Source: Phaeosaccion multiseriatum
Lineage: Eukaryota; Protista; Ochrophyta, other classes
Length of the DNA: 64,000 nt
Assembly (NCBI GenBank): GCA_965112735.1
Contig: OZ218951.1
Location: 4,774,001 to 4,838,000 of the forward strand
Direction: 5' to 3'
The stretch's first letter is position 1. Each line of letters opens with the position of its first letter. The notes below the pieces were generated by a model. The model saw only the letters and a program-made list of their open reading frames with translations. It did no database searches and was not told the origin of the DNA. The position numbers were made by a program, and so were the translations under genes. This document shows positions 896 through 38,782 of this stretch, piece after piece.

Positions 896-2170
896 TTACA
901 AGTAGAGCTCTTCAGAAGGAATCCCCTCCAGCGCGAGCAGCTCAACGGCAATCTCATCCAGCGCTTCGGGGCGAATCCCCCTCTGCAGTGGGCCCCCTTG
1001 CGCCTGCTGTGGACTGCGCCCCTCCGTCTCCCAAACGACGCGATGGCAGATCCGCATCATGTCCGCCACGTCCAGCGAGTCAAAGAAGCGCCCATCAGCA
1101 GCCACAAGGCCACGGACAACTTCATCAAGGCCCTGTTCGCGAGCCCGAGCCAGAGCCTCGGCAACGGAGGCCCCTGCCGCAAGCAGTTCTTGCACGGCCT
1201 CCTCGTTGTCTCTGCTCGCGGCGTCCAGCAGGGCGGTTTTAGGTGGAGAGCCTCTTATCCTGTCCACCTTCGCCCCAGCATGGACTAACACACGAATCAC
1301 CTTCGCATGGCCCTTCGAAGCTGCCACATGAAGCGGAGCGCTCCCGATGGTTGTCAAAAGGTCTACTGTTGCGCCTGCCGATAGCAGGGCCTCCACTACA
1401 GCACAATGGCCTCCTTGAGAAGCAAGAAAAAGGGGCGAAAACATGTCTTCACCTCCGACTGCATCGATGCACGCGCCAGCCGCAAGCAGAACACTCACTG
1501 TCGAGAGATGGCCATGATGGGCTGCGAAATGCAGAGCTGTTCGGGAGAGGGTATCCCTGCTCTCACTGTCCGCGCCACACGCAAGCAGCTGTCGAGCAAC
1601 GGCAGCATGGCCTGCTTCACAAGCCTCATGTAAGGGGGTGGAGCCCCCTTCATCTGCTGGATCCCTCTCTGCACCTGCGAGAAGCAGCTGCTGGACAATG
1701 CCTAAATGACCTCCTCCCGATGCCGCATGTAGCGGTGTCCAGTCCGCCGTGGTCGCCAAATTCGGGTCGGCATCAGCGGACAGCAGCTTCTCCACAACCC
1801 TCCCATGCCCAGCCCAGGCGGCATCATGCAGCGGCGTCGCACCAGTCTCGTCCATCGGATCAATGGCAGCGCCAAGAGAGATCAAATGGTGCACCATGGC
1901 TTCCAGGCCGAATCTGCTGGCCACATGCAGGGCACTCGAGCCGCCTGGCCCTGCCGTCCTGTCTATAGACGCCCCTTCTTCAAACAGCATCCCAACCACA
2001 CCAACTCGGTCGTTCGCGGTGGCCAGAATCATTGCTGTGCTCCCCCCTCCATCGATGGTCTCGTCCAGGCATGTCTTGTTTCCTCCGCTCTTCCGAATCA
2101 ACGCCCTCGCAGCTTCGCGGATGCTCTTGGTGCGCTCCCCACACGCGATGGCCTGAAAAAGTCGCTTGGC
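896..2170 (-). CDS. Ankyrin-repeat protein ANK1 (main exon; about 10 repeats; first exon unresolved)
   Basis: ORF 896..2215 has tandem ankyrin repeats (GATPLHDAAWAGHGRVVEKLL etc.). The acceptor aaacag|GCC at 2170 is at the same position as in its paralogues. N-cap (ALIRKSGGNKTCLDETID) and C-cap (ADGRFFDSLDVADMMR) are related to the other seven genes. Confidence 0.9.
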   Translation of the reverse strand, partial: AKRLFQAIACGERTKSIREAARALIRKSGGNKTCLDETIDGGGSTAMILATANDRVGVVGMLFEEGASIDRTAGPGGSSALHVASRFGLEAMVHHLISLGAAIDPMDETGATPLHDAAWAGHGRVVEKLLSADADPNLATTADWTPLHAASGGGHLGIVQQLLLAGAERDPADEGGSTPLHEACEAGHAAVARQLLACGADSESRDTLSRTALHFAAHHGHLSTVSVLLAAGACIDAVGGEDMFSPLFLASQGGHCAVVEALLSAGATVDLLTTIGSAPLHVAASKGHAKVIRVLVHAGAKVDRIRGSPPKTALLDAASRDNEEAVQELLAAGASVAEALARAREQGLDEVVRGLVAADGRFFDSLDVADMMRICHRVVWETEGRSPQQAQGGPLQRGIRPEALDEIAVELLALEGIPSEELYL

Positions 2171-3316
2171 CTGTTTAGAAAGGGAGCGTCGCTTGGCGTC
2201 AGCGCAGCAGCACATCGAGAGGGGGGTGGTGGCCAGGCACGGAGGGAAACAGCCAGCTCGCTCGCGCCATGTTTTAGACTGTTGCTCTAGCTATCATTTG
2301 CTTGGGGGGCTGGAAGACTGATGACGGGGTGACATAGGATGAGGAAAGCAGCGGGAAGGCACAACACACCCCGCCCCAGCGTCGCTCGCAGCCTCGCTCA
2401 CCTCCTTTGTCTCGCAAAAGGCTCTTCTCTCCATCTCGTCTCAGCCAGAGGAACCTTCGCTCAAGCCCAGCCCCGCCGCCCCCCTGTGATCGCCAGGCAG
2501 AGATAGATAGATAGAGAGAGAGAGAGAGAAAGAGAGACACCCGCAGGAACCAGGACTGCGACTCTCAAGCAAGGCCGGAGCCTCACAGTCGCCACACGTA
2601 CGGGCGGGGGCCCTACTAGAGAAGCCGATACAAGCGCCCTATCTGTGAGCACCGGCCGGACTCACACTTTGTGCATCAGGCAGCAGGCAACCGAGTATAG
2701 TGTGTAGAGTTGGATGAAGAATGGGGCAAGGAACCGCTGCTTCGGCCTACTTCCTGTAAGGGACGGATCTTGCAGCAGCGAGGAGGGACCTGTCTTGGTC
2801 ATGTAGCCATCGTTTCCCCCTACCAAATGTGTTTTGTGCACACTATCCCGCTTGGCCAACGCGGACTATCTCTCCTCCCTCTCTCCTCTCCTCTCCTCTC
2901 ACTATCTAAGCGTCGTATCCTGTTCGGTCCCGCGTGCTTCGCGTCCTCTTGCCTTCTACTCTATTCACAGTGCGTTGATTTCGCGCTTCGCCTTCTGCCC
3001 TCTCAGATGGACGCCTGCGCTAACAAGTCAAAGCCGCTCTACTCGCGTCGCGTACTCATTCCACTTCATGAGCTCGCCTTCCCGCCCGCTTCTCGAAGAG
3101 CAAGCGAGGTGAAAGCCTGGAGGGAATACTATTGATTACACGTTTCTCCCTCCTCTGTCCGGCAGATGAACGCAAAGGCTGTAAGGGGTACCTCTCTCGC
3201 TGCTCCTTCTGATATAGACTGCCTGACTGGCACAAGCGAGAGTGGCGCTACTTTTTCATCTCTTAAGGTCGTGGTTGCCCTGCCATCCCCCGCATCGCTC
3301 ATTCCCTCCTACTCGC

Positions 3317-4752
3317 TCATCCCATCTCCTCCGCCATGCTCTCCCATGTCTCGCTCTGCACCCCCCCGGGCCTCTCCAGCGGCAGGATTCCGCTCTCCTT
3401 GCCGAAGGTCGGATCCGTCCTTCGCATGAGGTCCAGCGCGGTTTGGGACCGGAAGAAGGCTGCTGCCGCCTCCATAAGTCGCTGCTCGATGCCGAGGCCG
3501 GGCTGACACCGCCGTGCCCCAGCCAAGGCCTTGTCCACCGAAGCACCGGCCGAGAGGAGCTGCCGCGCAGTCCCGTGCTGGTGTCTGCTGATGGCAGCAA
3601 GGAGAGGGGTGGCTCCGCTTGATGCCGTGATATCGATGAGGGATCCCGCAGAGATGAGACGAGCGACGACGGCCTCGTGCCCAAACTGCGCGGCGAGGTG
3701 GAGGGGTGCAACGCCCTTGTGGGTCCTTTTGTCCACACGTGCTCCCGCAGAGAGAAGCTTTCCCACCCCGGTGTCGTGTCCATGTTGAGAGGCAACGTGG
3801 AGAGGAGTGAAACCGTCGAGGTCAGCCTTGTCGATGCTGGCGTGGGCCCTGATGAGCTGCTGTACAACGCCCCCATAAGCGGAGTATTCCCTTGATTATC
3901 TGCGTTGTCCACATCCGCTTGGGCTGAGATGAGGTGCCTTATAACAGAGGTATGCCCGAAGTGAGAGGCAACATAAATCGGAGAAAAACCCTGCTCCTCC
4001 CTCAAGTCGGCATTAGCACGCGCCGAGAGCAGCCGCTGCACTATCGTGGATTGCCCCTCTTGCGATGCCGCGATCAAGGGAGTGACTCCTGTGGCATTCG
4101 CTTGGTCGACAGGTACTCCAATGTCCAACAGCCGCCTCACCACCTATCGTGTCCGTTGCTGCTCGCCAGTATAATCAATGGCGTGTGTCCAGAGGGTCCC
4201 CCTCTGGTGCTGAACGAGGCCCCTTCCCGCAGCAGCAGGTCCACGATATCCAACCGACCGTGTCGTGCACTCCCAAGTAATGCGACGTGTCCATTGTCAT
4301 CGATATGCTGATCCAAGCTCGCTTTGCCTTGTTTGGTGACAAGCTTCTTAACCAGCGCTCTCACAGTGGCAAAGCTGTCTCCTCTTTCCAGAGCCTGTCC
4401 GAGTCGCCGCGCCTGGTGTTGAGAGCAACACGTTCGGGGGAGACACGTACATTCATGGGATAAAAGGGATCAGCAGGCGGTTGCGCTTCGGAAGCGTCAG
4501 CTGAGCTTTCCACCCCAGCTATCGTATCCGCACCTCCTCCCTCATCTCGGCTTCCACCCCAGTTAACCTATCCGTAGCGCCCCCCCTTGCTTTGCTCTCT
4601 CCGAAACACAGAGGCTATCTTACTGTGCTTCAAAAGCGGGAGAGAGACGCATACACCGGATAAAAGGGGATAAGAGGAAGTGGATGAAGCACGAAGGATT
4701 CGCAGAGGAGGGGGCTAGGTCGTACCTCGGGTGTTAGTGCTGCCTGCTGCAC
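3317..4752 (-). pseudogene. Ankyrin-repeat pseudogene ANK2 (ANK5-8 subfamily)
   Basis: Exon 1 remnant VQQAALTPE|gtacgacc ends at 4726, with the CACCATG start deleted. Intron 4413..4725; exon 2 4412..3317. A 1-nt deletion near 4146 and a ~22-nt deletion near 3867 shift the frame. The C-terminus FFRSQTALDLMRRTDPTFGKES...EEMG is near-identical to ANK5-8. Confidence 0.85.
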
Positions 4753-5087
4753 CAGCAAGCGCTCCCCCCCATGAGGCGACGAGCTAACGAATGTAGAGGG
4801 ACGGCTTATACCCCCCTCCTCCATCCGCGAGCTAGGAAAAGAGAAAAGGAAGGAGGGAGAGAAGGAGGGGGACGCCTCGAACGCCGCCGGATCATCCCTC
4901 GGCTGCCATCCCTCAACTCTTCTGTGTAATCGGATCGTACTCGGGTAGCCGGAATGCAGCAATAATAGTAGTATAGGCGTTTACACCATTCGCAAGATGC
5001 TTCAGGGGATGGCAGGAGAAAAACAGGGCGGCGGCTGATGAGGGAAGGAGGGCAAGAGAAGTCTCACTCGTGGATCTTACGGCGCCC

Positions 5088-8024: not shown

Positions 8025-8083
<59 letters not shown>

Positions 8084-17436: not shown

Positions 17437-17467
<31 letters not shown>

Positions 17468-17468
17468 T

Positions 17469-17513
<45 letters not shown>

Positions 17514-21670: not shown

Positions 21671-23502
21671 TCATGCCATCTCCTCCGCCACCTCCTGCAG
21701 CACCCCAGGGCTGACCTCTCTCTGCGACACCTTCAGCCTCCCTTCCTTGCCAAAGAGAAGGTCAGTGCCCCGCATCAGGTCCAACGCGCTCTGTGACGCA
21801 AAGTGATGCCTGTCCGCGGCAAGGAGGAATTCAACAGATGCTTCATCGCAATAACTTCGTGCCTGAGTCAGAGCCTTTGACAGTGAGGCCCCTCCCGAGA
21901 GCAGCTCCAGCGCCGCCCCGCTGTGGCCTTGTTGTGCCGCACAAAACAAGGGAGTCAAACCGATAGTGCTATCATTGTCAGGATCAGCCCCCGCAGACAG
22001 CAGCACACGGACCACTGCCTCATGGCACTCCCCAGCAGCCATGAGCAAAGCTGTCAACCCATGACCATCGAGCACCCCCACGTCAGCACCTCCTGAGATG
22101 AGCTCCTCCACGACATGAGCATGGCCCTGGGCACATGCAAAATGTATCGCTCCATACCCGTCGCCACTGATCGCATTCACGTCTGCCCCAGCCCTAAGCA
22201 GCTTCCGCACAATGCTTCTGTGCCCTTCCCTCGACGCTCCCATCAACGCACTTCTCCCCCCCTCGCCGTTAAGGCTGTCGAGGTCCGCGCCGGCAGCGAT
22301 GAGCTGATCCACCACAAGGCCGTGTCCATCTCCGCTTGCAGTATAGAGCGGAAACAATCCGCTGTGGCCTCCCAAATTCACATCTGCCCCGGAGGTAAGC
22401 AGCAGCTGTGTGACCCTGTGGTGTCCCATTTTTGCGGCAATGCACAAGGGGGTGCGGCCATCAAGATCCAAGTGGTTGGGATCAGCGCCGGCCGACAGCA
22501 GCTGCTGCACCGTCGCAAGATGTCCTTCCTGGGAGGCTGCGATCAAGGCCGTAAAACCTTCCGAATCTGTCTTATCGACCTCCGCGCCGGCTGACAGCAG
22601 CTGCTGCACCACCGCACGACGCCCTTCCTGGGAGGCATATATCAAGGCCGTAAAGCCTCCAGATGCTGTCTTGTCGACCTCCGCGCCGGCTGAGAGCAGC
22701 TGCTGCACCACTCTTTCATGTCCTCCATGTGAGACTCTATGGAGGGCTGTACTTCCCTTCATATTTGCCCAGTCCACCTCTGCACCCGCCGCTAGCAGCT
22801 GCCGCACCACTGCATAATGTCCTTCCTGGGACGCCAATATCAAGGCGGTTAAGCCTTCCGAACCTGCCTTGTCGACCTCCGCGCCGGCTGACAGCAGCTG
22901 CCCGACAACTCTTTCATGCCCTTTAAGTGAGGCTGAAATGAGGGCTGTACCCCCCGTCATATTTGCCCAGTCCACCTCTGCACCTGCCGACAGCAGCTGC
23001 TGCACCACCGCATCATTTCCTTCCCAGGAGGCCACCATGAGAGCCGTAGTTCCGTCTGTCGTTACTGCATTCACGTCCGCACCAGGAGAGAGAAGCAGTG
23101 GTACAACAGCAGCAGCATCCTTCACCACCTTACATGCCAACATTAGCGCAGTCAACCCGCGCACACGATTTGCAGCATTCGGCGACGCCCCCTCTTGCAG
23201 CAGAAGAGCTATGATGTCCACCCTCCCATTATGTATAGCTCCGGTCAGGGGAGAGTATCCGCTCTCATCGTAGGGCTCGTCCAAGCATGCCTTCCTCCCT
23301 CCGTTTTTAGCGACAAGGGCTCTTACCGCCGCTTCCACCTTTTTGACCCTCTGGCCACTTATGATGGCTTCCCGCAGAAGGGTGGCCTGCCACACGGAGC
23401 AAAGCAGCAGCGCGAGAAAAAGGAGGGGGGACATGAATGGACAGAGCGAGTGCTTCATCATGGGGGGGGGGGCTTTACCTCAGTGCTGAAGGCCCTTTGC
23501 AT
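21671..23502 (-). CDS. Ankyrin-repeat protein ANK3 (14 repeats), join(23502..23479, 23386..21671)
   Basis: Exon 1 encodes MQRAFSTE followed by gtaaag; the acceptor is gcag|GCC. Open exon 2 has 14 ankyrin repeats and the C-cap ADRHHFASQSALDLMRGTDLLFGKE...EEMA. Confidence 0.93.
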
Positions 23503-24345
23503 GGTACCGGTTGAGCAAAGCAGAAAGAGAGAGGCGCGGTAAGAGCAGCGGCACAGAGAGCTGTCTGACTGGGGCAGTGTAGTGGACTTGGGAGATGTGT
23601 GATGAGATGAAAAGGGAGAAAGTTGAAATATGTCAAGGGGAACCTGTAACAACTGTGCGACCATTTTCTGAACGCACTCTCTCGACTCTCGCGCTGTGCC
23701 CCTTCCTCCTTGACGCACGCACTCATGTATCAGCATCCGCGCGGAGAGGGTCCTGGACCGAGGTCTGATTCACTTTAATCGCGACACAGGGAGGGGAAAG
23801 GGGCATCTGCTGCCTTCACTTCATCATGGACACTCAAACTGTAATAAATTATTATATGCTCCACCACTTTCAGCGAGCCTCTGCCTTGGAAGCTCCGAGG
23901 AAACCTTCCTCCTCCTCTCCCCTGCCCTCGGTAGCCCCAACTTTGCTCATGCGGGGCGTTGGGGGCAGCACCCAGGGGGGCAGCATGGCATGCCTTGGAG
24001 GGGGGTCACAAGCAACGGAACCACAGAACAAAGGGGGGAAGGGTCTCTCCTTCGCCTCCACGTGTGTAACTCTTTCATTGGCGTTTATGGAAAAGCAAGG
24101 TCACCCCGCCACTTCCAAGGACACCCTGGGGGGAGAGGGGAGTTGCTCTCCCCTTGGTCCTCCTGCCTACCCCACTGCCCCTTCATGCTGACGCACCATT
24201 CCGCATGGGCATGCCCACTCCCTCAACACCCTCTCACTCAAACTCAAACAATTCTCATGCCAAGAGCCCCTTCCTTTTCGTCCTCGCCCTTAGCTAGGGC
24301 AACACCCGCCGTCCTTCCCACCGCAGGCGAGAGACGCCCCTTTCA

Positions 24346-26003
24346 TCATGCCATCTCCTCCGCCACCTCCTGCAGCACCTCAGGGCTAAGCTCTCTCTGC
24401 GACACCTTCAGCCTCCCTTCCTTGCCAAAGAGAAGGTCAGTGCCCCGCATCAGGTCCAGCGCGGTCTGTGACGCAAAGTGATGTCTGTCCGCGGCCAGAA
24501 GGAACTCGATCGCTGCTACATCGTTATCAGCTCGCGCTTGAGTCAGAGCCTTTCCCAGTGAGGCCCCTCCCGAGAGCAGCTCCAGCGCCGCCCCGCTGTG
24601 GCCTTGTTGTGCCGCACAAAACAAGGGCGTTCCAAGAGTGTGTTTGCCGCCATTGTCAGGATCAGCCCACGCAGACAGCAGCACACGGACCACTGCCTCA
24701 TGGCCCTTCCCAGCAGCCATGAGCAAAGCTGTTGAATCGTAAATAGCAGTAGCCAGCATCTCCACGTCGCCCCCTCCTGAGATGAGCTCCTCCACGACGC
24801 GAGCATGGCCGTCTGCAGCTGCCAAGTGTATCGCTCCATACCCGTCGCCACTGATCACATTCACCTCTGCCCCAGCCCTGAGCAGCTTCCGCACAATGCT
24901 TCTGTGCCCTCCCAAAGACGCTCCCATCAACGCACTTCTCCCCCTCTCACCACTACGGCTTTCGAGTTCCGCGCCGGCTGCGATGAGCTGCTCCACCACA
25001 AGGCCATGTCCATGATCGCTTGCAGCATTGAGCGGAAACCATCCGCTGTGGCCTCCCAAATTCACATCTGCCCCGGAGGTAAGCAGCAGCTGTGTGACCC
25101 TGTGGTGTCCCATTTCTGCGGCAATGCACAAGGGGGTGCGGCCATGAAGATCCAAGTGGTTGGGATCAGCGCCGGCCGACAGCAGCTGCTGCACCGTCGC
25201 AAGATGTCCATTGTGGGAGGCCATTAGCAACGCCGTATAGCCTTCGGACTCTGTCTTATCGACCTCCGCGCCGGCTGAGAGCAGCTGCTGCACCACCGCA
25301 CGATGCCCTTCCTGGGAGGCATATAACAAGGCCGTAAAGCCTCCAGATGCTGTCTTGTCGACCTCCGCGCCGGCTGAGAGCAGCTGCTGAACCACTCTTT
25401 CATGTCCTCTATGTGAGACTATATGGAGGGCTGTACATCCCTTCATATTTGCCAAGTCCACCTCTGCACCCGCCGACAGCAGCTGCTGCACCACCACCAC
25501 GGACCCTCGCCGGGAGGCCACCATGAGAGCCGTAGTTCCCTCTGTCATTACTGCATTCACGTCCGCACCAGCAGAGAGAAGCAGTGGTACAACAGCAGCA
25601 GCATCCTTCACCACCTTACATGCCAACATTAGCGCAGTCAACCCGCCCACACGATTTGCAGAATTCGGCGACGCCCCCTCTTGCAGCAGAAGAGCTATGA
25701 TGTCCACCCTCCCATTATGTATAGCTCCGGTCAGGGGACACCACCCTCTCTCATCGAAGGGCTCGTCCAAGCATGCCTTCCTCCCTCCGTTTTTAGCGAC
25801 GAGGGCTCTCACCGCCGCTTCCACCTTTTTTACCCTCTGGCCACTTATGATGGCCTCCCGCAGAAGGGTGGCCTGCCACAAGGAGCAGCAGCACGAGAGT
25901 AAGAGGGGGGGATGCATGGGCAGAGCGAGTGAGTGCGTCGTTCGAGTGGGGGGACAAGGGGGGGGGGGGGGGGCTTTACCTCAGTGCTGAAGGCCCTTTG
26001 CAT
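24346..26003 (-). CDS. Ankyrin-repeat protein ANK4 (12 repeats), join(26003..25980, 25872..24346)
   Basis: Exon 1 (MQRAFSTE) is identical to that of ANK3. It is a tandem paralogue with two fewer repeats and an open frame. Confidence 0.93.
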
Positions 26004-26538
26004 GGTACCGGTTGAACAAAGCAGAAAGAAAGAGGCGCGGTAAGAGCAGCGGCACAGAGAGCTGTCTGACTGGGGCAGTGTAGTAGTGGAGGGGAGGAGG
26101 GGAATGAAGAAGATTGGGTTGCCTAAAAGTAACGACTTAAACCGCCCCGGGGATTTAGGCTTCCAGGCGCGTCAGTCTCGGAAGCGAAGCAAAGGTACGC
26201 AGTGGATGCCAGCAAGTGGGGAGGGAAACTCGATATGTCAATGGGAACCTGTAGCAACCCTCGATCCCATTCTGGATCGATCGGCCGTCGAGGACGGGAG
26301 CCTCACCCGAGATACCGCCGAGCTGCACCTCCCTCTCTCCTGGGTTAACCTGCGCGCCCACCTCGGAAGCGGATCGACAGCGACATGAGGCCACCTTCGA
26401 CAACGGACTCGACTCGCCCAGGGCACAACGCACCCTCCAGAAGGTCCTCGCTCCACAACGACGCACCGCGTTTCAAGACTCGCTGGAGACGCTCCCCGAC
26501 GACGCGACAGCGGCTGACACCGGCATGGAGCCAGCAGA

Positions 26539-26795
26539 CCTGACGTGATTCTGACGGAGGCGCGATTCGTGATTCTGGCGACCGCTATATTCTTCTGTGC
26601 ACCGCCACAGGCGTGGTTCGTGCTTCTCGGTGGTGCGCCTTAGAAATAAGGCAATGAATGACGTCATAGTGCGTAATAAAAAGTCAGGGAAACATGATTG
26701 AATATGGCGGCCGCCGGAGGCGTGATTCGTGATTCTGTGCACCGCTACAGGCGTGATTCGTGCTTCTCGGCGCCCTCCCTCAGAATCACGTCAGG
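26539..26795. mobile_element. Possible MITE-like element (~257 bp) with terminal inverted repeats
   Basis: CCTGACGTGATTCTGA at 26539 and its reverse complement TCAGAATCACGTCAGG ending at 26795 (similarity extends to ~25 bp). Internal ~50-bp direct repeats surround an AT-rich core. No clear target-site duplication. Confidence 0.4.
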
Positions 26796-26937
26796 GGTCG
26801 ACAGCAAGGCAAGGTGGGCTACAAGCACGCAACAGCCAGAAAAGGGAATAGCCAGCAAGACAGCCCCTATTCCGCCTTCCCGGACAGGTCTCCATGCCGG
26901 CTACAGACATGGTTGGGGCCCCACGCTGGAGTAGGGC

Positions 26938-27035
26938 TATGAAGCGAAGCAAGTTGTGATGGAGTAGAGTCATGAAGCGAAGCAAAAGCTGTGATGGAAT
27001 AGTGTCACGAAGCGAAGCAAAAGTTATGATGGTAG
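26938..27035. repeat. Minisatellite, ~34-bp unit x3
   Basis: atgaagcgaagcaa(aa)g(t/c)t(g/a)tgatgg is repeated three times. Confidence 0.85.
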
Positions 27036-27142
27036 CGAGGAAGGGACGATGTGCGTGCGTGTGGTCGTGTCGTGTGTACGGGTGCGTAGAAGTGTATAGC
27101 TAGTGATGTGGAGCGAGAAAAAGAGAGACTCGACATTCTTAC

Positions 27143-28591
27143 ATGCGTGCCCGAAGAAGCAGATGATGATTCACCTCCTTGACCCTGACCCTTGTGGTGC
27201 AGGCGGAGGTGGCGAGCGGGTGGAAGAGGACTCCCGATGGCCACCAGGGCATTAGCGGCTTCGTTCTCCGCGGGAGGCGTGGAGGATCGGAAGGGGCGGT
27301 GGCTGTCGCTGCGGTTGGGGTGGCCATCGCGAATCATGGTCATGGCTGGGTGGTGGGTCTGTTCCTTCTCCTCCTTCTCCTCCTGCTGCGGCTGCTGCTG
27401 CTGGCCAGTTGGTGCCTGCCGAATACCGGGGAGAGGCCAGTGAGTGAGGGAGGGGTGAGGAGGGGAGGGCGCGAGACACGAGCTTAGTAACAAGGAGTCG
27501 GGGGGGAAGGAGTGGGCGAGTGGAGCTCTCCCAAAGAGGAGGGGAGGCTGTAGCTAGCCGAAAGCAGGGGGCTCACAACTGGGCTCGCTCACGCACCCCC
27601 CACGCACTCGCCACCACTCACCTCAGCATTCGTGGTGCTCCACGGGGCCAGGCCCTCGGAATCGGTCCACGGCTTCTGGAACAGTAGAGCCGTGCCTGGG
27701 GACGGAGTGCTGATGCCCAGGTCCTGCAGGAGAATGGGGGAGAAGGTGAAGGGCTCCGCTGGCCTCGCGGAAGGGAGAGGAGTCCGTACAGCGGCTCCTG
27801 CTCCTGCTTCTCCTCCTCCTTCTCCTCCTGCTCCTCCTCCTGCTGGTGCTGCCGCAGATGCTGCTGGAGCTCCTGCTCCTCCGCCCCCCCCCTACTACTT
27901 CTCCTCCAGTGGGTGCTACTGCTGCCCCAGAGCCCTCCTTTTTCTGTGTCCCGCATCCTCTATTGACTCCTCCTTCTCCCTCGTCATTCTCGGATGTTCC
28001 CAGCGGCATCAAGACTTCGGGAGTCATGGTGCGAACGGGACTAGTGCGGAGGAGGGGCAAACTCTCTTGGTAGTCATCACAAAGGTGTCTTCCATTGCGG
28101 GCGATAGCCCCTTCACCCCCTGCCGGATGAGGAGCCGGGGCGCTCATGGGAGTCCGATTGAGGCTTGGCCGTGAAGCCGCGTGGATGGGAGACATGAAGG
28201 CCTGCATCTTCCCACCCCCAGCAAAAGAGGCGGAAGTGGCGAGCTGCGGAGATTTGGGGGGGAAAGGCAGAGGGATAGGCCGGTAAGGACCGCGGGTAGA
28301 AGCGGACATGATGGGAGGAGGGGCATTACCAGCCTCCAGCAAGTGTACGGAGCAAAGGACGCATTACCTTGCTTAGCCTTTCCTTATCTTTTGAGACTCG
28401 TGGGAGAATCTGGGTGGACCGGAGGAGAAACGTGGTGCAGCGGATGAGCCCATCACGCCCTGCAATAGCCGGGATGGAGAGGAAGCGGCAGGAGCAGCAG
28501 TAGGAGCCGCCGTCGCAGCAGCAGCCGCACGAATGGGCTCCAAAGGCGGGGCCTGGGATGTGTGCTGCTGTTCCTGCTTGCGCTTGACCAT
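27143..28591 (-). CDS. Hypothetical low-complexity protein (partial model; divergent from ANK5)
   Basis: Protein-like ORF pieces. The donor ...STTNAE|gtgagt at ~27620 joins in phase to the acceptor cggcag|APTGQQQQ at ~27415. There is a frameshift in the C-run at ~27885-27893 and an in-frame TAA at 28373-28375. No recognisable domain. Confidence 0.4.
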
Positions 28592-28947
28592 TCTTGCCGT
28601 TGCCCTGCTGAACTGACTGCGATCTTTCTGATCGTGTGTCGCGTAGCCCCTACACGTCCTTGGCTGCGTGTTGCGTGTGCTTCCTACGCCATCAGTGCTC
28701 TATGCTCCACGATTGTATCCTTCTCTTCCAAGGTTGAGAAGCTGAGGGGTCTCCTTCTAAAGATCGGGATCTGTGACTCTGGAGCATCAAGCCCCCCGAT
28801 GCCTTCAGAGGCCTCCAACAACCAAAAACGGGAGGGCCGTGACAGGCAGGGCGACTGACTACTGCACAGCAGGCACAGCAGCGAGAGAGCCTTCTGTAGG
28901 CCCCTTGTCAGCACTGCTCGTCTCAAGGGCGGAACCGCTTGCTCACC

Positions 28948-30456
28948 ATGGCGCAGCAGGCAGCTATAACGCCCGAGGTACGACCTAGCGCCCTCCTCTA
29001 CGACGGTGTTCTTCGGAAAGAATGGAGCAAAGAGAGGGGTTCTTGTGTGCGGATACGATAGCTGCGGTGGGAAGCTCACGTGTCGACGCAGAGGGCAGCG
29101 CTCTATTGATCCCTTTTTCCCCGGCGTTTGCGCCTCTCCCCCGCTTCCCAAGACAGTATACCAAGATGGACTCTGTGTTTCGGGGAGAGCAAAGCGAGGG
29201 GGGGCTTTGCGGATAGGATGGCGGCGGTGGGATGTTGGCGTATCGAAGCAGTGAGCAGCTTCCTGCTGATCCCTTTCATTCTATGTACGTGCGTGCGTCT
29301 CTCCTTCCCCACTTCGTTGCCCTCAACAACACCAGGCGCGGCGACTCGAAAAGGCCCTGGTCAGAGAAGGCAGCTTCCCCACGGTGAAAGCGCTGATTGG
29401 GAAGCTCATCGCCAAGCACGGCAAAGCAAGCTTGGATCAGCCCATCGACGACGAAGGATGTACCGCAGTGTTTAGGGCTGCAGTGCACGATCGGCTGGAT
29501 GTCTTAGACCTTCTCCTGCGGGAAGGAGCCTCCTTCAGCACCAGAGGGGGACCCTTTGGAGGCACGCCGTTGATAGCGGCTAGCAGCTGCGGACACGATC
29601 AGGTGGTGAGGCGGCTGTTGGACATGGGAGCCCCTGTCGACCAAGCGAATGCCACAGGACTTACTCCCGTGATATGGCGGCATCGGTAGAGGGGCACTCC
29701 ACGACAGTGCAGCAGCTGCTCTCGGCGCGTGCTAATGTCGACTTGGCGGAGGAACGCGGAGTTTCTCCGATTTGGATAGCCTCTCAGAACGGACATGGCT
29801 CTGTTGTAAGGCACCTCATCTCAGCCCAAGCGGATGTGAACCACGCAGAAAATCGCGGCGGTTATACTCCGCTTCAGCAGGCATCGATGAAAGGGCATGC
29901 GGGTATCGTACAACAGCTCATCAGGGCCCACGCCAGCATCGACAAGGCTGACTTCGAAGGTTTCACTCCTCTTCACCTTGCCTCTGAACATGGGCACGGC
30001 GCTGTGGTGGAGAAGCTTCTCTCTGCGGGAGCGCGTGTGGACAAACGGGCCAACAACGGCACAACACCTCTCTACCTTGCCGCGTATATTGGACACGAGG
30101 CCGTCGTCGCTCGTCTCATCTCTGCGGGATCCCCCATCGATGTCACGGCAACAAACGGTACCACCCCTCTCCTTGTTGCCATCAACAGACACCACCACGG
30201 GACTGCGCGGCAGCTCCTCTCGGCCGGTGCTTCGGTGGACAAGGCCTTGGCTGGGGCACGGCGGTGTCAGCTCGGCCTCGGCATCGAGCAGCGACTTATG
30301 GAGGCGGCAACAGCCTTCTTCCGATCCCAAACCGCGCTGGACCTCATGCGAAGGACGGATCCGACCTTCGGCAAGGAGAGTGGAATCCTGCCGCTGGAGA
30401 GGCCCTGGAGTGTGGGGAGCGAGACGTGGGAGAGCATGGCGGAGGAGATGGGCTGA
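28948..30456 (+). CDS. Ankyrin-repeat gene ANK5 (8 repeats), join(28948..28977, 29336..30456), with one 2-nt frameshift near 29672
   Basis: Exon 1 MAQQAAITPE|gtacgacc; acceptor acaccag|GCG. GTG AT ATG GCG shows an extra AT relative to the paralogues, so it is either a young pseudogene or a sequencing error. Confidence 0.85.
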
Positions 30457-31252
30457 GCGAGCAGCCAGGAGGGATGCGCGAGGTGGGGGCTGATGGGGCA
30501 ACGACGACTTTGGCAACGAAAGTGTATCGCTCCGGAATGCTCGCTTGCACCATTCATGCAGCCCAGCCATGCGAGTGAGCCTGTACATCAGGATGCAATG
30601 AGAGAGAGAGAGACTGCCCACGGCACACTGGCTTGGTGTTAGAAGGGTGAAGTGATTGCGATCCTCTGTCGCAGGGAGGAGCGAAGTATATGAGGTTGGG
30701 GGTCCGGGGGGGGGTAGGGGGGGAGGGGAGTCATGTGTGTAGCTTACGGGCAATGGGTGAAGAAGTGTATAGCTTGAGGGAGGAGGGAGAGGGAAGGTCA
30801 GTTCGTTTGAAGGGGGGAGAGTGTAATCCCGAGGGTCGAGGCCGAGGGCTTCCTTGGTGGGGCATGCGGGTACAGCAAGTAGTCGTAGCTTAGAGAAAGG
30901 CACTGCCCTGCTAAACACACAATGGTAAAGGTGAACGCCAGGTCGTTGTGTTCGTGTGGAAGCGGAAGGAAGGCACCGCTCATCTAGGCAGCAGCGGCGC
31001 GGTCGCGTCTGCGCGCACTCACACAGCCTTGCTGCCGCTGGCTTGCCCAAGGAACTCCCCCTCCTTGGATCGGGATCTGTGAATCGGATCACCAAACCCA
31101 ATGCCTGCTTCAGAGGCCTCATAGCTAAACTTTATCAGAGAGCGGGGAGGACGGTGATAGGCAGAGCCACTGATTCCTGCACAGCAGCAAGAGAGCCTTC
31201 TGTAGGCCTCTTGTCAGCACTACCGTCTCAAGCGCAAGGCCTCTTGCTCACC

Positions 31253-32756
31253 ATGGCGCAGCAGGCAACTTTAACGCCCGAGGTACGACCTAGCGCCCTC
31301 CTGTAGGACGTTGTTCTCGGAAAGAATGGAGCAAAGAGAGGGGTTCTTGTGCGGATACGATAGCTGCGGTGGGAAGCTCACGTATCGACGCAGAGGGAAG
31401 CTCTCTATTGATCCCTTTTTCTCCGGCGTATGTGCCTCTCCCCCGCTTCTCAAGACAGTACACTAAGATGGACTCTGTGTTTCGGGGAGAGCAAAGCGAG
31501 GGGGGGCTTTGCGGATACGATGGTGGCGGTGGGATGTTGGCGTATCGAAGCAGTGAGCAGCTTCCTATTGATCCCTATTATCCTATGTACGTACGTGCGT
31601 CTCTCCCCCCCGAACTCGTTTCCCTCAACAACACCAGGCGGGGCGGCTGGGGCAGGCTCTGAAGAGAGGAGACAGCTTCCCCACTGTGAAAGCGCTGATT
31701 GGGAAGCTCATCGCCAAACATGGCAAAGCAAGCTTGGATCAGCCCATCGACGAAGAAGGAAGTACCGCAATGCTTGAGGCTATACTGCACGATCGGCTGG
31801 ATGTCTTAGACCTGCTGCTGCGGGAAGAGGCCTCCTTCAGCACCAGAGGGGGCCCCTTTGGATACACGCCGTTGATAGCGGCTAGCAGCTGCGGACACGA
31901 TCAGGTGGTGAGGCGGCTGTTGGACATGGGAGCCCCTGTCGACCAGGCGGACGCCACAGCAGGAGCTACTCCCTTGATGGTAGCGTCGGAAAGGGGGCAC
32001 TCCACGACTGTGCAGCAGCTGCTCTCGGCGCGTGCTATTGTCGACTTGGCCGATAAGCGGGGTATCTCTGCGATTTGGATTGCCTCTCAGAACGGACATG
32101 GCTCTATTGTAAGGCACCTCATCTCAGCCCAAGCGGATGTGAACCACGCAAGTAATCAGGGGAGAACTCCGCTTCATCAGGCATCTGTTGAAGGGCATGC
32201 GGGAATTGTACAGCAGCTCATCAGGGCCCACGCCAGCATCGACAAGGCTGACCTCGAAGGTTTCACTCCTCTTCACCTTGCCTCTCAAGAGGGACACGAC
32301 GCCGTGGTGGAGAAGCTTCTCTCTGCGGGAGCGCGTGTGGACAAATGGGCCAACAACGGCACAACACCTCTCTACCTTGCCGCGCATTGTGGACACGAGG
32401 CCGTCGTCGCTCGTCTCATCTCTGCGGGATCCCCCATCGATATCACGGCATCAAACGGAGCAACCCCTCTCCTTGCTGCCATCAACAGACACCACCACTG
32501 GACTGCGCGGCAGCTCCTCTCGGCCGGTGCTTCGGTGGACAAGGCCTTGGCTGGGGCACGCCGGTGTCAGCTCGGCCTCGGCATCGAGCAGCGACTTATG
32601 GAGGCGGCAACAGCCTTCTTCCGGTCCCAAACCGCGCTGGACCTCATGCGAAGGACGGATCCGACCTTCGGCAAGGAGAGCGGAATCCTGCCGCTGGAGA
32701 GGCCCTGGAGTGTGGGGAGCGAGACGTGGGAGAGCATGGCGGAGGAGATGGGCTGA
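31253..32756 (+). CDS. Ankyrin-repeat protein ANK6 (8 repeats), join(31253..31282, 31638..32756), intact
   Basis: Exon 1 MAQQATLTPE|gtacgacc, a phase-0 intron, and an open exon 2 ending ...SETWESMAEEMG*. Confidence 0.93.
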
Positions 32757-33538
32757 GCGAGCAGCCAGGAGGGATGCGCGAGGTGGGGGCTGATGGGGCA
32801 ACGACGACTTTGGCAACGAAAGTGTATCGCTCCAGAATGCTCGCTTGCACCATTCATGCAGCCCAGGCATGCGAGTGAGCCTGTGCATCAGAATGCGATG
32901 CGAAAGAGAGACTGCCCATGGCACACTGGCTTGGTGTTAGTAGGGTGAAGTGATTGCGATCCTCTGTCGCAGAGAGGAGCGGAGCACAGGAGGGAGGGGG
33001 TCCGGGGGGGGGGAGGGGAGTCATGTGTGTATCGTAGCTTATAGCTTGAGGGAGGGGGGAGAGGGAAGGTCAGTTCGTTTGAAGGGGGGAGAGTGTAGTC
33101 CCGATGGGTCGAGGCCGAGGGCTTCCTTGGTGGGGCATGAAGATACAGCAAGTAGTCGTAGCTTAGAGAAAGTACTGCCCTGCTAAACACACAATGGTAA
33201 AGGTGAACGTCAGGTCGTTGTGCTCGTGTGGAGGCGGAAGGAAGGCACCGCTCATCTAGGCAGCAGCGGCGCGGGCGCGTCTGTGCGTACTTAAACTCAA
33301 CACGGCCTTGCTGCCGCTGCCTTTCACCCAACAAGGAACTCCGCCCTCCTTGGATCGGGATCTGTGAATCCGATCACCAAACCCAATGCCTGCTTCAGAG
33401 GCCTTTATAGCTAAACTTTATCAAAGAGCGGGGAGGCCAGCGATAGGCAGAGCCACCGACAGCTGCACAGCAGCGAGAGAGCCTTCTGTAGGCCTCTTGT
33501 CAGCACTACCGTCTCAAGCGTAAGGCCGCTTGCTCACC

Positions 33539-34090
33539 ATGATGGCGCAGCAGGCAACTCATCAGGGCCCACGCCAACGTCGACAAGACTAGCCTGGAAG
33601 GTTTCACTCCTCTTCACCTTGCCTCTCAAGAGGGACACGACGCCGTGGTGGAGAAGCTTCTCTCTGCAGGAGCACGTGTGCACAAAGGGACCAACAAGGG
33701 CGCAACACCTCTCCACCTTGCCGCGCAGGATGCCGTCGTCGCTCGTCTCATCTCTGCGGGGATCCCCCATCGATGTCACGACAACACACGGTACCACCCC
33801 TCTCGTTGTTGCCATCAACAAAGACCACCACGGGACTGCGCGGCAGCTCCTCTTGGCCGGTGCTTCGGTGGACAAGGCCTTGGCTGGGGCACGGCGGTGT
33901 CAGCTCGGCCTCGACATCGAGCAGCGACTTCTTGAGGCGGCAGCAGCCTTCTTCCGGTCCCAAACCGCGCTGGACCTCATGCGAAGGACGGATCCGACCT
34001 TCGGCAAGGAGAGCGGAATCCTGCCGCTGGAGAGGCCTGGCGGGGTGCAGAGCGAGACGTGGGAGAGCATGGCGGAGGAGTTGGGCTGGG
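33539..34090 (+). pseudogene. Ankyrin pseudogene ANK7 with ~950-bp internal deletion
   Basis: Exon 1 ATG ATG GCG CAG CAG GCA ACT is fused directly and out of frame to catcagggcccacgcc (repeat 5 of exon 2), with TAG soon after. There is a further in-frame deletion removing GHE, a 1-nt insertion at ~33760, and loss of the normal stop. Confidence 0.9.
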
Positions 34091-34748
34091 CGAGCAGCAG
34101 GGATGCGGGAGGTGGGGGCTGGTCGTGCAACGACGACTTCGGCAACGAACGAGTACCGCTCCAGCTCGCTCGCTTGCACCAATCATGCAGCCCTTGCGAG
34201 TGAGCCTTACATCAGGATGCGATGCGAGAGAGAGACTGCCCATGGTACACTGGTTTGGTGCAGGAGCGATGAAGTGGTTGCGATCCTCTGTCGCAGAGAG
34301 GGGCGGAGTACAGGAGGTAGGGGGTCCGGGGGAGTAGGGGAGTCACGTGTTTAGCTTATGGGATCAATGGGTGAAGTGTATAGCTTGAGGGGGGTGGGGA
34401 GGGAAGGTCAGTTCGTTTGAAGGGGGGAGAGTGTAATGCCGATAGACGGCGAGGGGTCCCTGGGGCTGTGCTCGTGTGGAGGCAGAAGGCAGGCTAACTC
34501 TCATCTAGGCAGCAACTGCGTCTGTACGCACTCAAGACTGCCCTCTCGCCCACGCGTAACGGAACTCCACCCCCCTGGGATCAGGATCTGTGAATCGGAT
34601 CACCAAACCCAAAAAATGCCTTCAGAGGCCTCCATGATTTCAAACTGATCAGAGAGCGGGGAGGAGCCAGTGACTACTGCAGCGAGAGGGCATTTGGCAG
34701 CCCCTTTGTCAGCACTGCTCGTCTCAAGGGCGGGGCCGCTTGCTCACC

Positions 34749-36305
34749 ATGGCGCAGCAGGCAAATCTAACGCCCGAGGTACGACCCAGCGTCCTCCTGT
34801 AGGACGGTGTTCTTCGGAAAGAATGGAGCAAAGAGAGGGGTTCTTGTGCGGATAGATAGCTGCGGTGGGTTCTCACGTATCAACGCAGAGGGAAGCTCTC
34901 TATTGATCCCTTTTTCTCCGGCGTATGTGCCTCTCCCCCGCTTCTCAAGACAGCACACTAAGATGGGGGGGGAGAGGAAAGCGAGGGGGGGCTTTGCGGA
35001 TACGATGGCCGCGGTGGGATGTTGGCGTATCGAAGCAGCGAGCACCTTCCTGTTGATCTCTATTATCCTATGTACGTGCGTGCTTCTCTCCCCCCCGAAC
35101 TCGTTTCCCTGCCTCAACAAAACCAGGCGGGGCGGCTGGGGCAGGCTCTGAAGAGAGGAAACAGCCTCTCCATTGTGAAAGCGCTGATTGGGAAGCTCAT
35201 CGCCAAGCATGGCAAAGCAAGCTTGGATCAGCCTATCGACAAAGACGGATGTACCGTAATGCTTGTGGCGGCACTGCACGGCCGGTTGGATATCGTGGAC
35301 CTTCTGCTGCGGGAAGGGGCCTCCTTCAGCACCAGAGGGGGACCCTATGGATACACGCCATTGATGGCGGCTAGCGGATACGATGAGGTGGTGAGGCGGC
35401 TGTTGGACAGTGGAGCACCTGTCGACCAAGCGAATACCAGAGGAGCTACTCCCTTGTTTGTAGCATCGCAAGAGGGGTACTCCACGACTGTGAAGCAGCT
35501 GCTCTCGGCGCGTGCTAATGTCAACTTGGCAAACGAACGCGGAGTTTCTCCGATTTGGATGGCCTCTCACAACGGACATGGCTCTGTTGTAAGGCACCTC
35601 ATCTCAGCCCAAGCGGATGTAAACCACGCAAGTAATCGCGGTTATACTCCGCTTCGGGAGGCATCGCTCAATGGGCATGCGGGCATCGTACAGCAGCTCA
35701 TCAGGGCCCACGCCAGCATCGACAAGGCTGACATCGAAGGCTTCACTCCTCTTCACCTTGCCTCTCAACAAGGACACGACGCCGTGGTGGAGAAGCTTCT
35801 CTCTGCGGGAGCACATGTGGACAAAAGGACCAACAAGGGCTCAACACCTCTCCACCTTGCCGCGCAGGATGCTGGGCACGAGGCAATCGTTGCTCGTCTC
35901 ATCTCTGCGGGATCCCCCATCGATGTCCCAAGATCAGACGGTGCCACCCCTCTCTTTGGTGCCATCTGCGGAGGCCACCACGGGACTGCGCGGCAGCTCC
36001 TCTCGGCCGGTGCTTCGGTGGACAAGGCCTTGGCTTGGGCGCCGCGGTGTCCGCTCGGCCTCGGCATCGACGCGGTGGCTTGGGTGCCGGGGTGTACACT
36101 CGGCCTCGGCATCGGCGCGGTGTCCGCTCGGCCTCGGCAGCGACTTCTGGAGGCGGCAGCAGCCTTCTTCCGGTCTCAAACGGCGCTGGATCTCATGCGA
36201 AGGACGGATCCGACCTTCGGCAAGGAGAGCGGAATCCTGCCGCTGGAGAGGCCCTGGAGTGTGGGGAGCGAGACGTGGGAGAGCGTAGCGGAGGAGATGG
36301 GCTGA
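34749..36305 (+). CDS. Ankyrin-repeat protein ANK8 (8 repeats), join(34749..34778, 35127..36305), intact, with duplication in the C-cap
   Basis: Exon 1 MAQQANLTPE|gtacgacc and an open exon 2. An internal tandem duplication at ~36030..36137 stays in frame. Confidence 0.92.

Positions 36306-36774: not shown

Positions 36775-38782
<2,008 letters not shown>

What the first reader, a model, noticed from the sequence alone, without database searches (positions are those of the whole stretch)
21671..36305. A natural DARPin-like repertoire: capped all-ankyrin genes hypervariable only at binding-surface positions
Seen: eight paralogues (ANK1-8; two lie at 0.9-4.7 kb) share one plan of a 24-30 nt first exon (unresolved in ANK1), a phase-0 intron, and one exon encoding an N-cap, 8-14 ankyrin repeats and a private C-cap (F.SQ.ALDLMR.TD..FGKE...EEM). 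They have no other domain, signal peptide or TM helix. Between close paralogues the second helix is nearly invariant (e.g. GHAGIVQQLIRAHASIDKAD). The residues around the GxT turn and the 2+2 positions in L-xx-AS-xx-GH change, often at several bases per codon. Repeat 3 reads MAASVE/MVASER/FVASQE, repeat 5 QQASMK/HQASVE/REASLN, and repeat 7 AAYI/AAHC/AAQD/AAQF; ANK3 vs ANK4 gives ASWEG/ASRRG, YTASGD/NAASDH and ASRE/ASLG. Established: the beta-turn and helix-1 positions form the ankyrin binding groove and are the ones randomised in designed ankyrin repeat proteins. Inference: a rapidly diversifying cytosolic recognition family, possibly an algal innate-immune or decoy-binder system against viruses or parasites, with the conserved C-cap as a common effector-docking element.
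Basis: partly seen in the sequence, partly recalled or inferred. Interest (0 to 1): 0.88.

Follow-up and report, generated by a model that had tools for sequence, protein, structure and literature searches.

The report
Tandem ankyrin genes with variable binding face
A cluster of eight ankyrin-repeat-only genes, five intact and three broken, differ from each other mostly at the residues that ankyrin proteins use to grip their targets; this looks like selection for new binding specificities, but whether the genes are expressed and what they bind is unknown.

Summary
The window has eight ankyrin (ANK)-only paralogues in three subfamilies. All share one plan: a 24-33 nt first exon, a phase-0 GT..AG intron, and one exon encoding an N-cap, 8-14 repeats and a family-specific C-terminal tail.

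Only five are intact (G, A, B, D, F). H, C and E carry frameshifts, a lost start codon or a large internal deletion.

Amino-acid differences concentrate at the beta-turn and inner-helix positions. In both close subfamilies, 45-46% fall on the six DARPin-randomised positions, which are 18% of repeat codons (p about 2e-4).

My own codon models give omega of 3-4 at these sites (p<1e-6) and reject M1a for M2a (p=1.4e-5). Groove dN is 3-5 times the intron divergence. The signal weakens (omega 1.3-3.5, p 0.58 to 0.0004) if groove codons get their own synonymous rate. The copies are also recombination/gene-conversion mosaics.

The tail has no detectable homologue or known fold. No RNA data could be found: the four runs behaved like DNA.

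The immune/decoy role and the "effector-docking" tail are unsupported guesses. The nearest precedent is the hypervariable ANK repeats of fungal NOD-like receptors.

First readers of this scan flagged similar ANK arrays elsewhere in this genome.

The parts
896..2434 (-). Exon 1 is 2434-2402 (33 nt), the intron is 2401-2171 (231 nt, GT..AG, phase 0), and exon 2 is 2170-896. The protein is 435 aa.
   Evidence: about 39% identity to the other subfamilies but the same N-cap and tail
3317..4755 (-). Copy H, a pseudogene of the C/D/F subfamily. The start codon is absent (TGGTG where the others have ATGGCG). There is a 1-nt deletion after 4146 and a 22-nt deletion after 3877.
   Evidence: its intron is 0.38-0.43 diverged from C/D/F
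21671..23502 (-). Copy A, intact. Exon 1 is 23502-23479 (24 nt), the intron is 23478-23387 (92 nt), and exon 2 is 23386-21671. The protein is 579 aa with 14 repeats.
24346..26003 (-). Copy B, intact. Exon 1 is 26003-25980, the intron is 107 nt, and exon 2 is 25872-24346. The protein is 516 aa with 12 repeats. It differs from A by an in-register indel of exactly two repeats (66 aa); B repeat 3 is a chimera of A repeats 3 and 5.
28948..30456 (+). Copy C, a pseudogene as assembled. Exon 1 is 28948-28977, the intron is 28978-29335, and exon 2 runs from 29336. A 2-nt insertion at 29672-29673 shifts the frame.
   Evidence: not checked against reads
31253..32756 (+). Copy D, intact and used as the reference copy. 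Exon 1 is 31253-31282, the intron is 31283-31637 (355 nt), and exon 2 is 31638-32756. The protein is 382 aa with an N-cap, 8 repeats and the tail.
   Evidence: AF2 model with the ANK core at pLDDT 85-96; superposes on DARPins and AnkB
33542..34086 (+). Copy E, a truncated pseudogene. The exon-1 start is fused out of frame to the middle of the gene, so about 0.9 kb of intron, N-cap and repeats 1-5 is missing. It also has a 9-nt deletion, a 1-nt insertion at 33758, and a lost stop codon.
   Evidence: the contigs laid on it show no indel at these places
34749..36305 (+). Copy F, with an intact reading frame. Exon 1 is 34749-34778, the intron is 34779-35126, and exon 2 is 35127-36305. The protein is 402 aa. 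An in-frame 66-nt insertion at 36071-36136 lies inside the tail.
32520..32753 (+). Family-specific C-terminal tail, shown for copy D (78 aa). Three helices continue the ANK stack, followed by about 30 residues predicted disordered that end in AEEMG/AEEMA.
   Evidence: conserved in all three subfamilies; no Pfam, sequence or fold relative
31205..31218 (+). Conserved GGCC(C/T)CTTGTCAGC motif about 36-49 nt upstream of the ATG in C, D, E and F. The other sites are 28899-28912, 33491-33504 and 34700-34713. It is part of the roughly 2.3-kb tandem unit.
   Evidence: the count alone is not above chance (6 of 100 shuffles), but the position is conserved

Best explanation
**Proposed explanation**

This is a lineage-restricted, tandemly arrayed family of soluble, ankyrin-repeat-only proteins. 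It evolves by gene birth and death.

- **How new copies arise and are lost.** Unit duplications of about 2.3-2.6 kb, in-register gain or loss of repeats, and recombination/gene conversion between neighbours keep producing new copies. Some of these decay into pseudogenes.
- **What selection does.** It keeps the folding framework, both caps and the C-terminal tail nearly constant. At the same time it favours, or at least maintains, amino-acid differences on the concave face (beta-turn tips and the inner helix).
- **Result.** Each intact copy therefore presents a different binding surface on a common scaffold.
- **Likely role.** The most likely role is as a set of variable target-binding modules. 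The common N-cap and tail would supply a shared function such as stability, localisation or a common partner.

**Shown here:** the anatomy, the site-specific variability, omega above 1 under standard assumptions, the mosaicism and the pseudogenes.

**Inferred only:** that the proteins are made, that the variable face binds ligands, and any link to defence.
For: - Gene models and lesions.
- ANK-only domain content.
- The ANK core is modelled with confidence and superposes on DARPins (6moj_A: TM 0.92 by target, rmsd 1.5 A).
- Variability by register, and enrichment at the a-priori DARPin positions in two subfamilies (p about 2e-4 each).
- By the Nei-Gojobori counting method, groove dN is 0.27-0.46, framework dN 0.04-0.10 and gene-wide dS 0.14-0.19.
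- Intron divergence among D/C/F is 0.06-0.12.
- The fixed-partition codon model gives groove omega 3.2-3.7 for C/D/F/H trios and 3.7-3.9 for A/B, with p from 8e-7 to 5e-13.
- The class-free M1a/M2a test gives 2dlnL=22.4, p=1.4e-5, with 10% of sites at omega 6.3.
- Of 25 sites with posterior above 0.5, 18 lie on groove registers (p=3e-10).
- Tandem-copy mosaicism.
- In-register two-repeat indel between A and B.
- Conserved coding segments have a summed contig depth about 10-70 times the single-copy level at single positions, so many more copies exist in the genome.
Against: - With a free substitution rate for groove codons, omega drops to 1.3-3.5 and five of the eight comparisons are not significant.
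- Synonymous four-fold differences are also raised next to groove codons (0.164 against 0.088). Part of the clustering may therefore be mutational or conversion-driven.
- Against pseudogene H, groove dN is about equal to intron divergence.
- Recombination violates the single-history assumption of the codon models.
- Only 3-5 sequences per subfamily were available, and the models are my own implementations, not PAML.
- There is no expression evidence at all.
- Three of the eight copies are dead.
Confidence: 0.6

Rival explanations
1. There is relaxed constraint but no positive selection. Groove residues are simply the positions the ANK fold does not constrain, so they drift at the neutral rate. 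Meanwhile purifying selection and homology-dependent gene conversion keep the framework, its synonymous sites and the introns artificially similar. That makes groove dN look larger than dS.
For: - Mosaic structure and spatially clustered quartet splits.
- Synonymous divergence in helix 2 is half that near the groove.
- H's intron is 0.38-0.43 diverged, but its exon dS is only 0.17-0.19 and its groove dN is 0.40-0.46, about the intron rate.
- The free-rate models often do not reject omega=1.
Against: - The conversion tracts seen here span 100 nt or more and include the introns. They would reset groove codons too.
- In the D-C 3' segment, where total divergence is only 0.7-6%, my reading of the alignment is that about 8 of about 16 groove codons differ.
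- The class-free M2a model fits a class with omega 6.3.
- The share of differing codons with several base changes is about twice as high in groove codons.
Confidence: 0.2
2. Templated patch import. The clustered multi-base differences are brought in as short gene-conversion patches from the large pool of paralogues, pseudogenes included, rather than by point mutation. This is a way of generating diversity and could operate with or without selection.
For: - Synonymous changes sit beside nonsynonymous ones in the variable patches, as in the D/C tract around the repeat 3/4 turn, and four-fold differences are raised near the groove.
- All three quartet splits occur, at groove sites too.
- Three pseudogenes keep the family's pattern of variation.
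- Tens of further copies exist in the genome.
Against: - No donor for any patch was identified in the window.
- The patches are only 1-3 codons long and alternate with identical framework every 10-20 nt, which is shorter than usual conversion tracts.
- It cannot be tested without the rest of the genome.
Confidence: 0.15
3. A decaying or selfishly amplified repeat array with no present cellular function. The copies would be recent duplicates on the way to pseudogenisation, and their variation is of no consequence.
For: - Three of the eight copies are broken.
- No expression evidence was found.
- No homologue of the tail exists outside this genome.
- Copy number is high.
Against: - Framework omega is 0.34-0.45 by counting and 0.4-0.6 by maximum likelihood among D/C/F.
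- The tail is nearly invariant: C-cap dN is 0-0.04 among D/C/F.
- Five long reading frames are intact, with conserved splice sites.
- Three subfamilies about 40% identical still keep the same caps. This means long-term purifying selection.
Confidence: 0.07

Closest known systems
Highly conserved ANK (and TPR, WD) repeat domains of fungal NOD-like receptors (Dyrka et al. 2014, PMC4986451; read)
   Same: - ANK repeats with a fixed framework.
- Repeat-number changes by in-register recombination.
- Concerted evolution or gene conversion.
[quoted passage not shown]
   Different: - There is no NACHT/NB-ARC or N-terminal effector domain here; Pfam finds only Ank.
- The diversity is between tandem paralogues, not between the alleles or repeats of one gene.
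- Internal repeat identity is 58-79% at the DNA level, below the fungal criterion of at least 85% identity over 100 amino acids or more.
- A private C-terminal tail is present.
Designed ankyrin repeat proteins (DARPins)
   Same: - An N-cap, stacked repeats and a C-cap with no other domain.
- The model of D superposes on DARPin structures.
- Five of the six randomised positions (2, 3, 5, 13, 14 in DARPin numbering, taken from my own knowledge of Binz et al. 2003) are among the most variable here.
   Different: - This is a natural family.
- DARPin position 33 is not variable here, while the two helix-1 positions corresponding to H9 and L10 are.
- The caps are unrelated in sequence to the designed caps.
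- A disordered acidic tail follows the cap.
- The resemblance is an analogy of architecture, not family membership.
ANK proteins with C-terminal E3-adaptor boxes (poxvirus ANK/PRANC, ASB ANK-SOCS box, ANK-F-box, ANK-BTB)
   Same: An ANK array followed by a short conserved helical C-terminal element. First readers of this scan report other ANK arrays in the same genome with F-box-like or BTB partners (unchecked).
   Different: - The tail here matches no F-box, PRANC, SOCS-box or BTB model, even at E up to 10.
- Fold searches return only weak ANK-like matches.
Repeat-based candidate receptors of brown algae (LRR-ROCO and NB-ARC-TPR genes with exon shuffling; Zambounis et al. 2012, cited from my own knowledge and not read here)
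   Same: A lineage-specific expansion of repeat proteins with variable repeats, proposed as pathogen receptors in an alga.
   Different: - Those genes have signalling domains and one repeat per exon.
- Here all repeats lie in one exon and no signalling domain is present.
- The organism of this window was not identified.

Membership tests
Ankyrin repeat proteins (Pfam clan Ank) | Significant matches to the Ank / Ank_2 models | tested here: met
   E 2e-84 to 1e-34 for A, B, C, D and F
Ankyrin repeat proteins (Pfam clan Ank) | Stacked helix-turn-helix and beta-hairpin solenoid fold | tested here: met
   AF2 model with core pLDDT 85-96. Foldseek hits to DARPins and AnkB at E about 1e-13 to 1e-11, with rmsd 1.5-2.8 A for the best superpositions.
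DARPin-like architecture (analogy, not homology) | Only an N-cap, internal repeats and a C-cap; no other domain, signal peptide or TM helix | tested here: met
DARPin-like architecture (analogy, not homology) | Variation confined to library positions 2, 3, 5, 13, 14 and 33 | tested here: inconclusive
   Five of the six are among the most variable, with enrichment p about 2e-4 in each subfamily. Position 33 (register 29) varies little (0.17), while registers 5, 6 and 30 vary a lot.
Fungal-type NLR with hypervariable ANK repeats | Central NACHT or NB-ARC NOD domain | tested here: not met
   Pfam finds only Ank families. The gene models leave no room for one.
Fungal-type NLR with hypervariable ANK repeats | High internal repeat conservation (at least 85% identity over 100 aa or more) | tested here: not met
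   The best internal unit pairs in A are 79% identical at the DNA level; most are 40-70%.
Fungal-type NLR with hypervariable ANK repeats | Positive selection at concave-face positions and repeat-number change | tested here: met
   (with the caveats); two-repeat in-register indel between A and B
ANK + PRANC / F-box / SOCS-box / BTB adaptors | Recognisable box domain C-terminal (or N-terminal) to the repeats | tested here: not met
   - No Pfam family at E up to 10 for three tails.
- No sequence relative among 5.8 billion or 1.84 billion proteins.
- No relative in viral or metagenome contigs.
- Fold hits are only weak and ANK-like.
Expressed diversifying immune-receptor repertoire | Transcription of the intact copies, and induction on infection | not testable with these tools
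   - Runs X1-X4 show uniform depth of about 100x on introns and spacers.
- They show no intron-skipping joints, which is DNA-like behaviour.
- No RNA-Seq run was listed.

The most novel reading that the evidence does not exclude
The ANK-only arrays of this genome, here and at the other places flagged by first readers of the scan, would form a germline-encoded repertoire of soluble recognition proteins. It would be built on ankyrin repeats instead of LRRs or immunoglobulin domains. The repertoire would be diversified by positive selection and refreshed by patchwise gene conversion from neighbouring copies and pseudogenes. It would be used for defence against viruses or parasites through a common partner that binds the private C-terminal tail.
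Probability: 0.1. Interest if true: 0.85.

Novelty: new variant of a known kind. Interest (0 to 1): 0.5.

Why it matters
Repeat proteins whose target-binding residues are under diversifying selection are the common currency of innate recognition. Examples are plant and animal LRRs, lamprey variable lymphocyte receptors (VLRs), and the WD/TPR/ANK repeats of fungal NLRs.

A stand-alone, capped ANK family with the same signature and no signalling domain would be a different way of building such a repertoire. It would also be a natural counterpart of engineered DARPins.

If the proteins are expressed, three things become directly testable:
- the variable face predicts paralogue-specific ligands;
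- the invariant tail predicts one common partner;
- the natural scaffold and caps could interest binder engineers.

If they are not expressed, the locus is just a clear example of birth-and-death and gene conversion in a repeat-protein array.

Tried and rejected
1. **Homologues of whole copy D**. Only generic ANK proteins at 44% identity or less were found, and no member of this family is in the collection.
2. **Homologues of the tail.**
   - The word-index search found nothing.
   - The profile search of 1.84 billion representatives gave one hit, E=8e-5. It is an ordinary ANK stretch of a fungal-type repeat protein and is spurious for the tail.
   - Viral and metagenome contig scans found nothing.
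   - The ESM Atlas gave chance-level scores of 0.79 or less.
   - Pfam at E up to 10 found nothing.
   - Fold searches of a tail model gave only weak ANK-like hits. I therefore rejected the PRANC/F-box/SOCS-box idea.
3. **Viral or mobile origin.** No support: conserved spliceosomal introns, the same G+C as the flanks, and no viral relative.
4. **Expression.**
   - The four runs offered as possible RNA behave like DNA. They have uniform depth on introns and spacers and no joint at 31283/31637 or 34779/35126.
   - A second search restricted to RNA-Seq libraries listed none.
5. **Organism identification** through the neighbouring helicase exon. Only fragments at 44% identity or less were returned, because full-length helicases are excluded by the tool's length window. 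This was not informative.
6. **Copy number from contig depth.** The four runs disagree: about 9 to 73 times single copy at position 31726. I use this only as 'many more copies exist'.


Full report
**1. What is there**

A tblastn search with the long ANK reading frames finds eight copies in the window.

| Copy | Coordinates | Strand |
|---|---|---|
| G | 896-2434 | - |
| H | 3317-4755 | - |
| A | 21671-23502 | - |
| B | 24346-26003 | - |
| C | 28948-30456 | + |
| D | 31253-32756 | + |
| E | 33542-34086 | + |
| F | 34749-36305 | + |

They fall into three subfamilies:
- G stands alone, about 39% identical to the rest.
- A and B are 76% identical over the tblastn alignment, gaps included.
- C, D, E, F and H are 76-85% identical to one another.

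Pfam finds only ankyrin families in them. C to F are head-to-tail units about 2.3 kb apart, and A and B lie about 2.5 kb apart on the other strand.

**2. Gene plan**

- C, D and F start with a 30-nt exon (ATGGCGCAGCAGGCA...). A GT..CAG intron of 348-358 nt follows, then a phase-0 second exon that runs to the stop.
- A and B have a 24-nt first exon (ATGCAAAGGGCCTTCAGCACTGAG) and introns of 92 and 107 nt.
It has a 33-nt first exon at 2434-2402 and a 231-nt intron.

The spliced products are 435 aa (G), 579 aa (A, 14 repeats), 516 aa (B, 12 repeats), 382 aa (D, 8 repeats) and 402 aa (F). All are free of internal stops.

The N-termini have no hydrophobic core. The only hydrophobic windows above the usual threshold are charged ANK helices. 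I therefore agree there is no signal peptide or membrane helix.

**3. Corrections to the observation**

Three copies are broken as assembled.
- H has no ATG, a 1-nt deletion after 4146 and a 22-nt deletion after 3877.
- C has a 2-nt insertion at 29672-29673.
- E keeps the upstream region and start codon, but these are fused out of frame to the middle of the gene. About 0.9 kb is missing. E also has a 1-nt insertion at 33758 and has lost the stop.

F is open but has a 66-nt in-frame insertion inside the tail (36071-36136).

The contigs laid on D-E-F show no indel at E's lesions. C and H were not checked against reads.

**4. Where the copies differ**

I projected C, F, H and E onto D's reading frame. 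Each codon was given a repeat register with the G of GxTPLH as 0.

- Pairwise amino-acid differences are most frequent at registers 1, 9, 32, 6, 10 and 5, where 0.53-0.71 of comparisons differ.
- Registers 30, 31 and 15 are intermediate, at about 0.4.
- The rest of the framework is at 0-0.24.

The six positions randomised in DARPin libraries were fixed a priori from my own knowledge of Binz et al. 2003. They are positions 2, 3, 5, 13, 14 and 33, which correspond to registers 31, 32, 1, 9, 10 and 29.

- They hold 70 of 152 differences among D/C/F and 29 of 64 between A and B.
- They make up 18% of repeat codons.
- Random six-register sets reach these counts 34 and 46 times in 200,000.

Two independent subfamilies therefore show the same pattern, and it is far beyond chance.

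Among groove codons that differ, 29-43% (mean about 35%) have two or three base changes, against 15-22% of framework codons.

The AF2 model of D has a confident ANK core. It superposes on DARPin and ankyrin-B structures. These registers are therefore the beta-turn tips and the exposed side of the inner helix.

**5. Is it selection?**

*Evidence for.*

By the Nei-Gojobori counting method:

| Quantity | Value |
|---|---|
| Groove dN | 0.27-0.46 |
| Framework dN | 0.04-0.10 |
| Gene-wide dS | 0.14-0.19 |
| Intron divergence among D/C/F | 0.06-0.12 |

I wrote a GY94 codon model with a fixed site partition on three-taxon star trees. A star tree has only one topology, so there is no topology to get wrong.

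- With a shared synonymous rate, groove omega is 3.2 for the a-priori set in D/C/F (2dlnL=25.9, p=3.5e-7). The other trios give 3.2-4.6.
- A/B gives 3.9 (p=8e-7).
- Framework omega is 0.4-0.7 in the C/D/F/H trios and 0.64-0.71 in A/B.

A class-free M1a/M2a comparison on D/C/F gives 2dlnL=22.4 (p=1.4e-5), with 10% of sites at omega 6.3. Of the 25 sites with posterior above 0.5, 18 lie on groove registers, which are 63 of 367 codons (p=3e-10). Three more lie at register 30.

*Evidence that weakens it.*

- When groove codons get their own rate multiplier, the multiplier is 1.3-3.3. Omega falls to 1.75-3.5 in the C/D/F/H trios (p from 0.12 to 0.0004) and to 1.3-1.7 in A/B, which is not significant.
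- Four-fold synonymous differences in conserved codons next to the groove are twice as frequent as in helix 2 (0.164 against 0.088).
- For pseudogene H, intron divergence (0.38-0.43) is about equal to groove dN (0.40-0.46) and exceeds exon dS.
- The copies are mosaics. Along the unit the closest pair changes from D-F to D-C to C-F and back to D-C. The three possible quartet splits occur 18, 12 and 9 times in spatial clusters.

*Weighing.*

The conversion tracts visible here are 100 nt or longer and include the introns. They would reset groove codons together with their neighbours. Yet in the D-C 3' segment, where overall divergence is 0.7-6%, my reading of the alignment is that about half of the groove codons differ.

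I therefore judge diversifying selection, or at least selection that maintains differences, on the binding face to be the best reading. I put it at about 0.6. The rivals are drift plus homogenisation, and patchwise templated conversion.

**6. Repeat dynamics**

- A and B differ by exactly two repeats (66 aa), and B's third repeat is a chimera of A's repeats 3 and 5.
- In A, repeats 3/5 and 4/6 are 79% identical at the DNA level, which marks an older two-repeat duplication.
- Orthologous units of A and B range from 80% to 99% identity.

**7. The tail**

After the last repeat, all three subfamilies share about 75 residues. The pattern is GAS..KAL..AR, then L.AA..F.S...D.MR, then T..., then R, and the tail ends in AEEM(G/A) in the two close subfamilies (AVEL plus an extension in G).

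A model built with the six-sequence alignment gives three helices that continue the stack (pLDDT 80-88). A tail of about 30 residues follows with low confidence.

Nothing related was found:
- by Pfam at E up to 10;
- by the word-index search;
- by a profile search of 1.84 billion representatives, where the one hit is a spurious ANK-repeat match;
- by viral or metagenome scans;
- by the protein atlas;
- by fold search.

It is a private cap plus tail. Calling it an effector-docking element is a guess. The F-box/PRANC idea from an earlier first-reader note finds no support in the copies I tested.

**8. Expression and copy number**

The four runs found with the D-E-F stretch behave like DNA.
- Unique pieces in introns, spacers and coding sequence all have the same depth: about 105, 50, 100 and 530 in the four runs.
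- No contig skips an intron.

No RNA-Seq run was listed.

At conserved coding positions, the summed depth is roughly 10 to 70 times the single-copy level, and higher in bin sums. The four runs disagree on the figure. Together with the first readers' notes of seven more copies just upstream and other ANK arrays elsewhere, this shows the family is much larger than eight.

**9. Comparison with what is known**

The closest described case is the ANK, TPR and WD repeat domains of fungal NOD-like receptors. [quoted passage not shown]

This family works like that on the recognition side, but it fails two defining features:
- it has no NOD domain;
- its internal repeat identity is below that class.

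It shares architecture with DARPins, but that is an analogy. It is not a recognisable ANK-box E3 adaptor.

I rate it a new variant of a known kind: a stand-alone capped ANK family with groove-focused diversification and an orphan tail.

**10. Verdict**

The claim about the binding face is reasonably supported. The claims about function are not.
- Interest is 0.5. The pattern is clean and replicated in two subfamilies. However, the principle is known from other repeat receptors, expression is untested, and the organism was not identified.

Noticed in passing
window 10792-19300 (- strand): A multi-exon gene for a FANCJ/Rad3-type DNA helicase. Its C-terminal exon at 10792-11958 matches Helicase_C_2 (PF13307) proteins that their sources name Fanconi anemia group J protein. 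The exons are rich in poly-G, poly-Q and other low-complexity runs.
   Followed up: partly
window 36071-36136 (+): Copy F has an in-frame 66-nt insertion in the otherwise invariant tail. It partly repeats the preceding W-A-P-R-C-P-L-G-L-G-I segment. It may disrupt the cap helices although the frame stays open.
   Followed up: partly
window 28899-28912, 31205-31218, 33491-33504, 34700-34713 (+): The motif GGCC(C/T)CTTGTCAGC sits about 36-49 nt upstream of the ATG of C, D, E and F. It is probably a promoter or 5'-UTR element of the tandem unit. An earlier first-reader note saw a similar motif as inverted repeats beside orphan ANK copies.
   Followed up: partly
window 33542-33557 (+): The deletion that created pseudogene E joins the exon-1 sequence GCGCAGCAGGCA to the similar GTGCAGCAGCTC of a helix-2 codon run. 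That is a junction at microhomology.
   Followed up: no
window 12135-12944 (both strands): A long tandem array of a short unit, about 24 nt. In one frame it reads as repeated SALCPLP and on the other strand as GRGQRAE. It lies within or next to the helicase gene region.
   Followed up: no
window-wide, e.g. 7900-8100, 14900-15300, 37200-37700, 54600-55400: There are very many (GT)n/(CA)n microsatellites and G-rich or C-rich low-complexity runs. They produce long spurious reading frames such as CVCVCV and THTHTH.
   Followed up: no
window 31000-31180 and 32629-32809: Summed contig depth is tens to hundreds of times the single-copy level, both on the tail-coding segment and on the spacer upstream of D. 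The whole unit, not only the coding part, appears to be multi-copy in the genome.
   Followed up: partly
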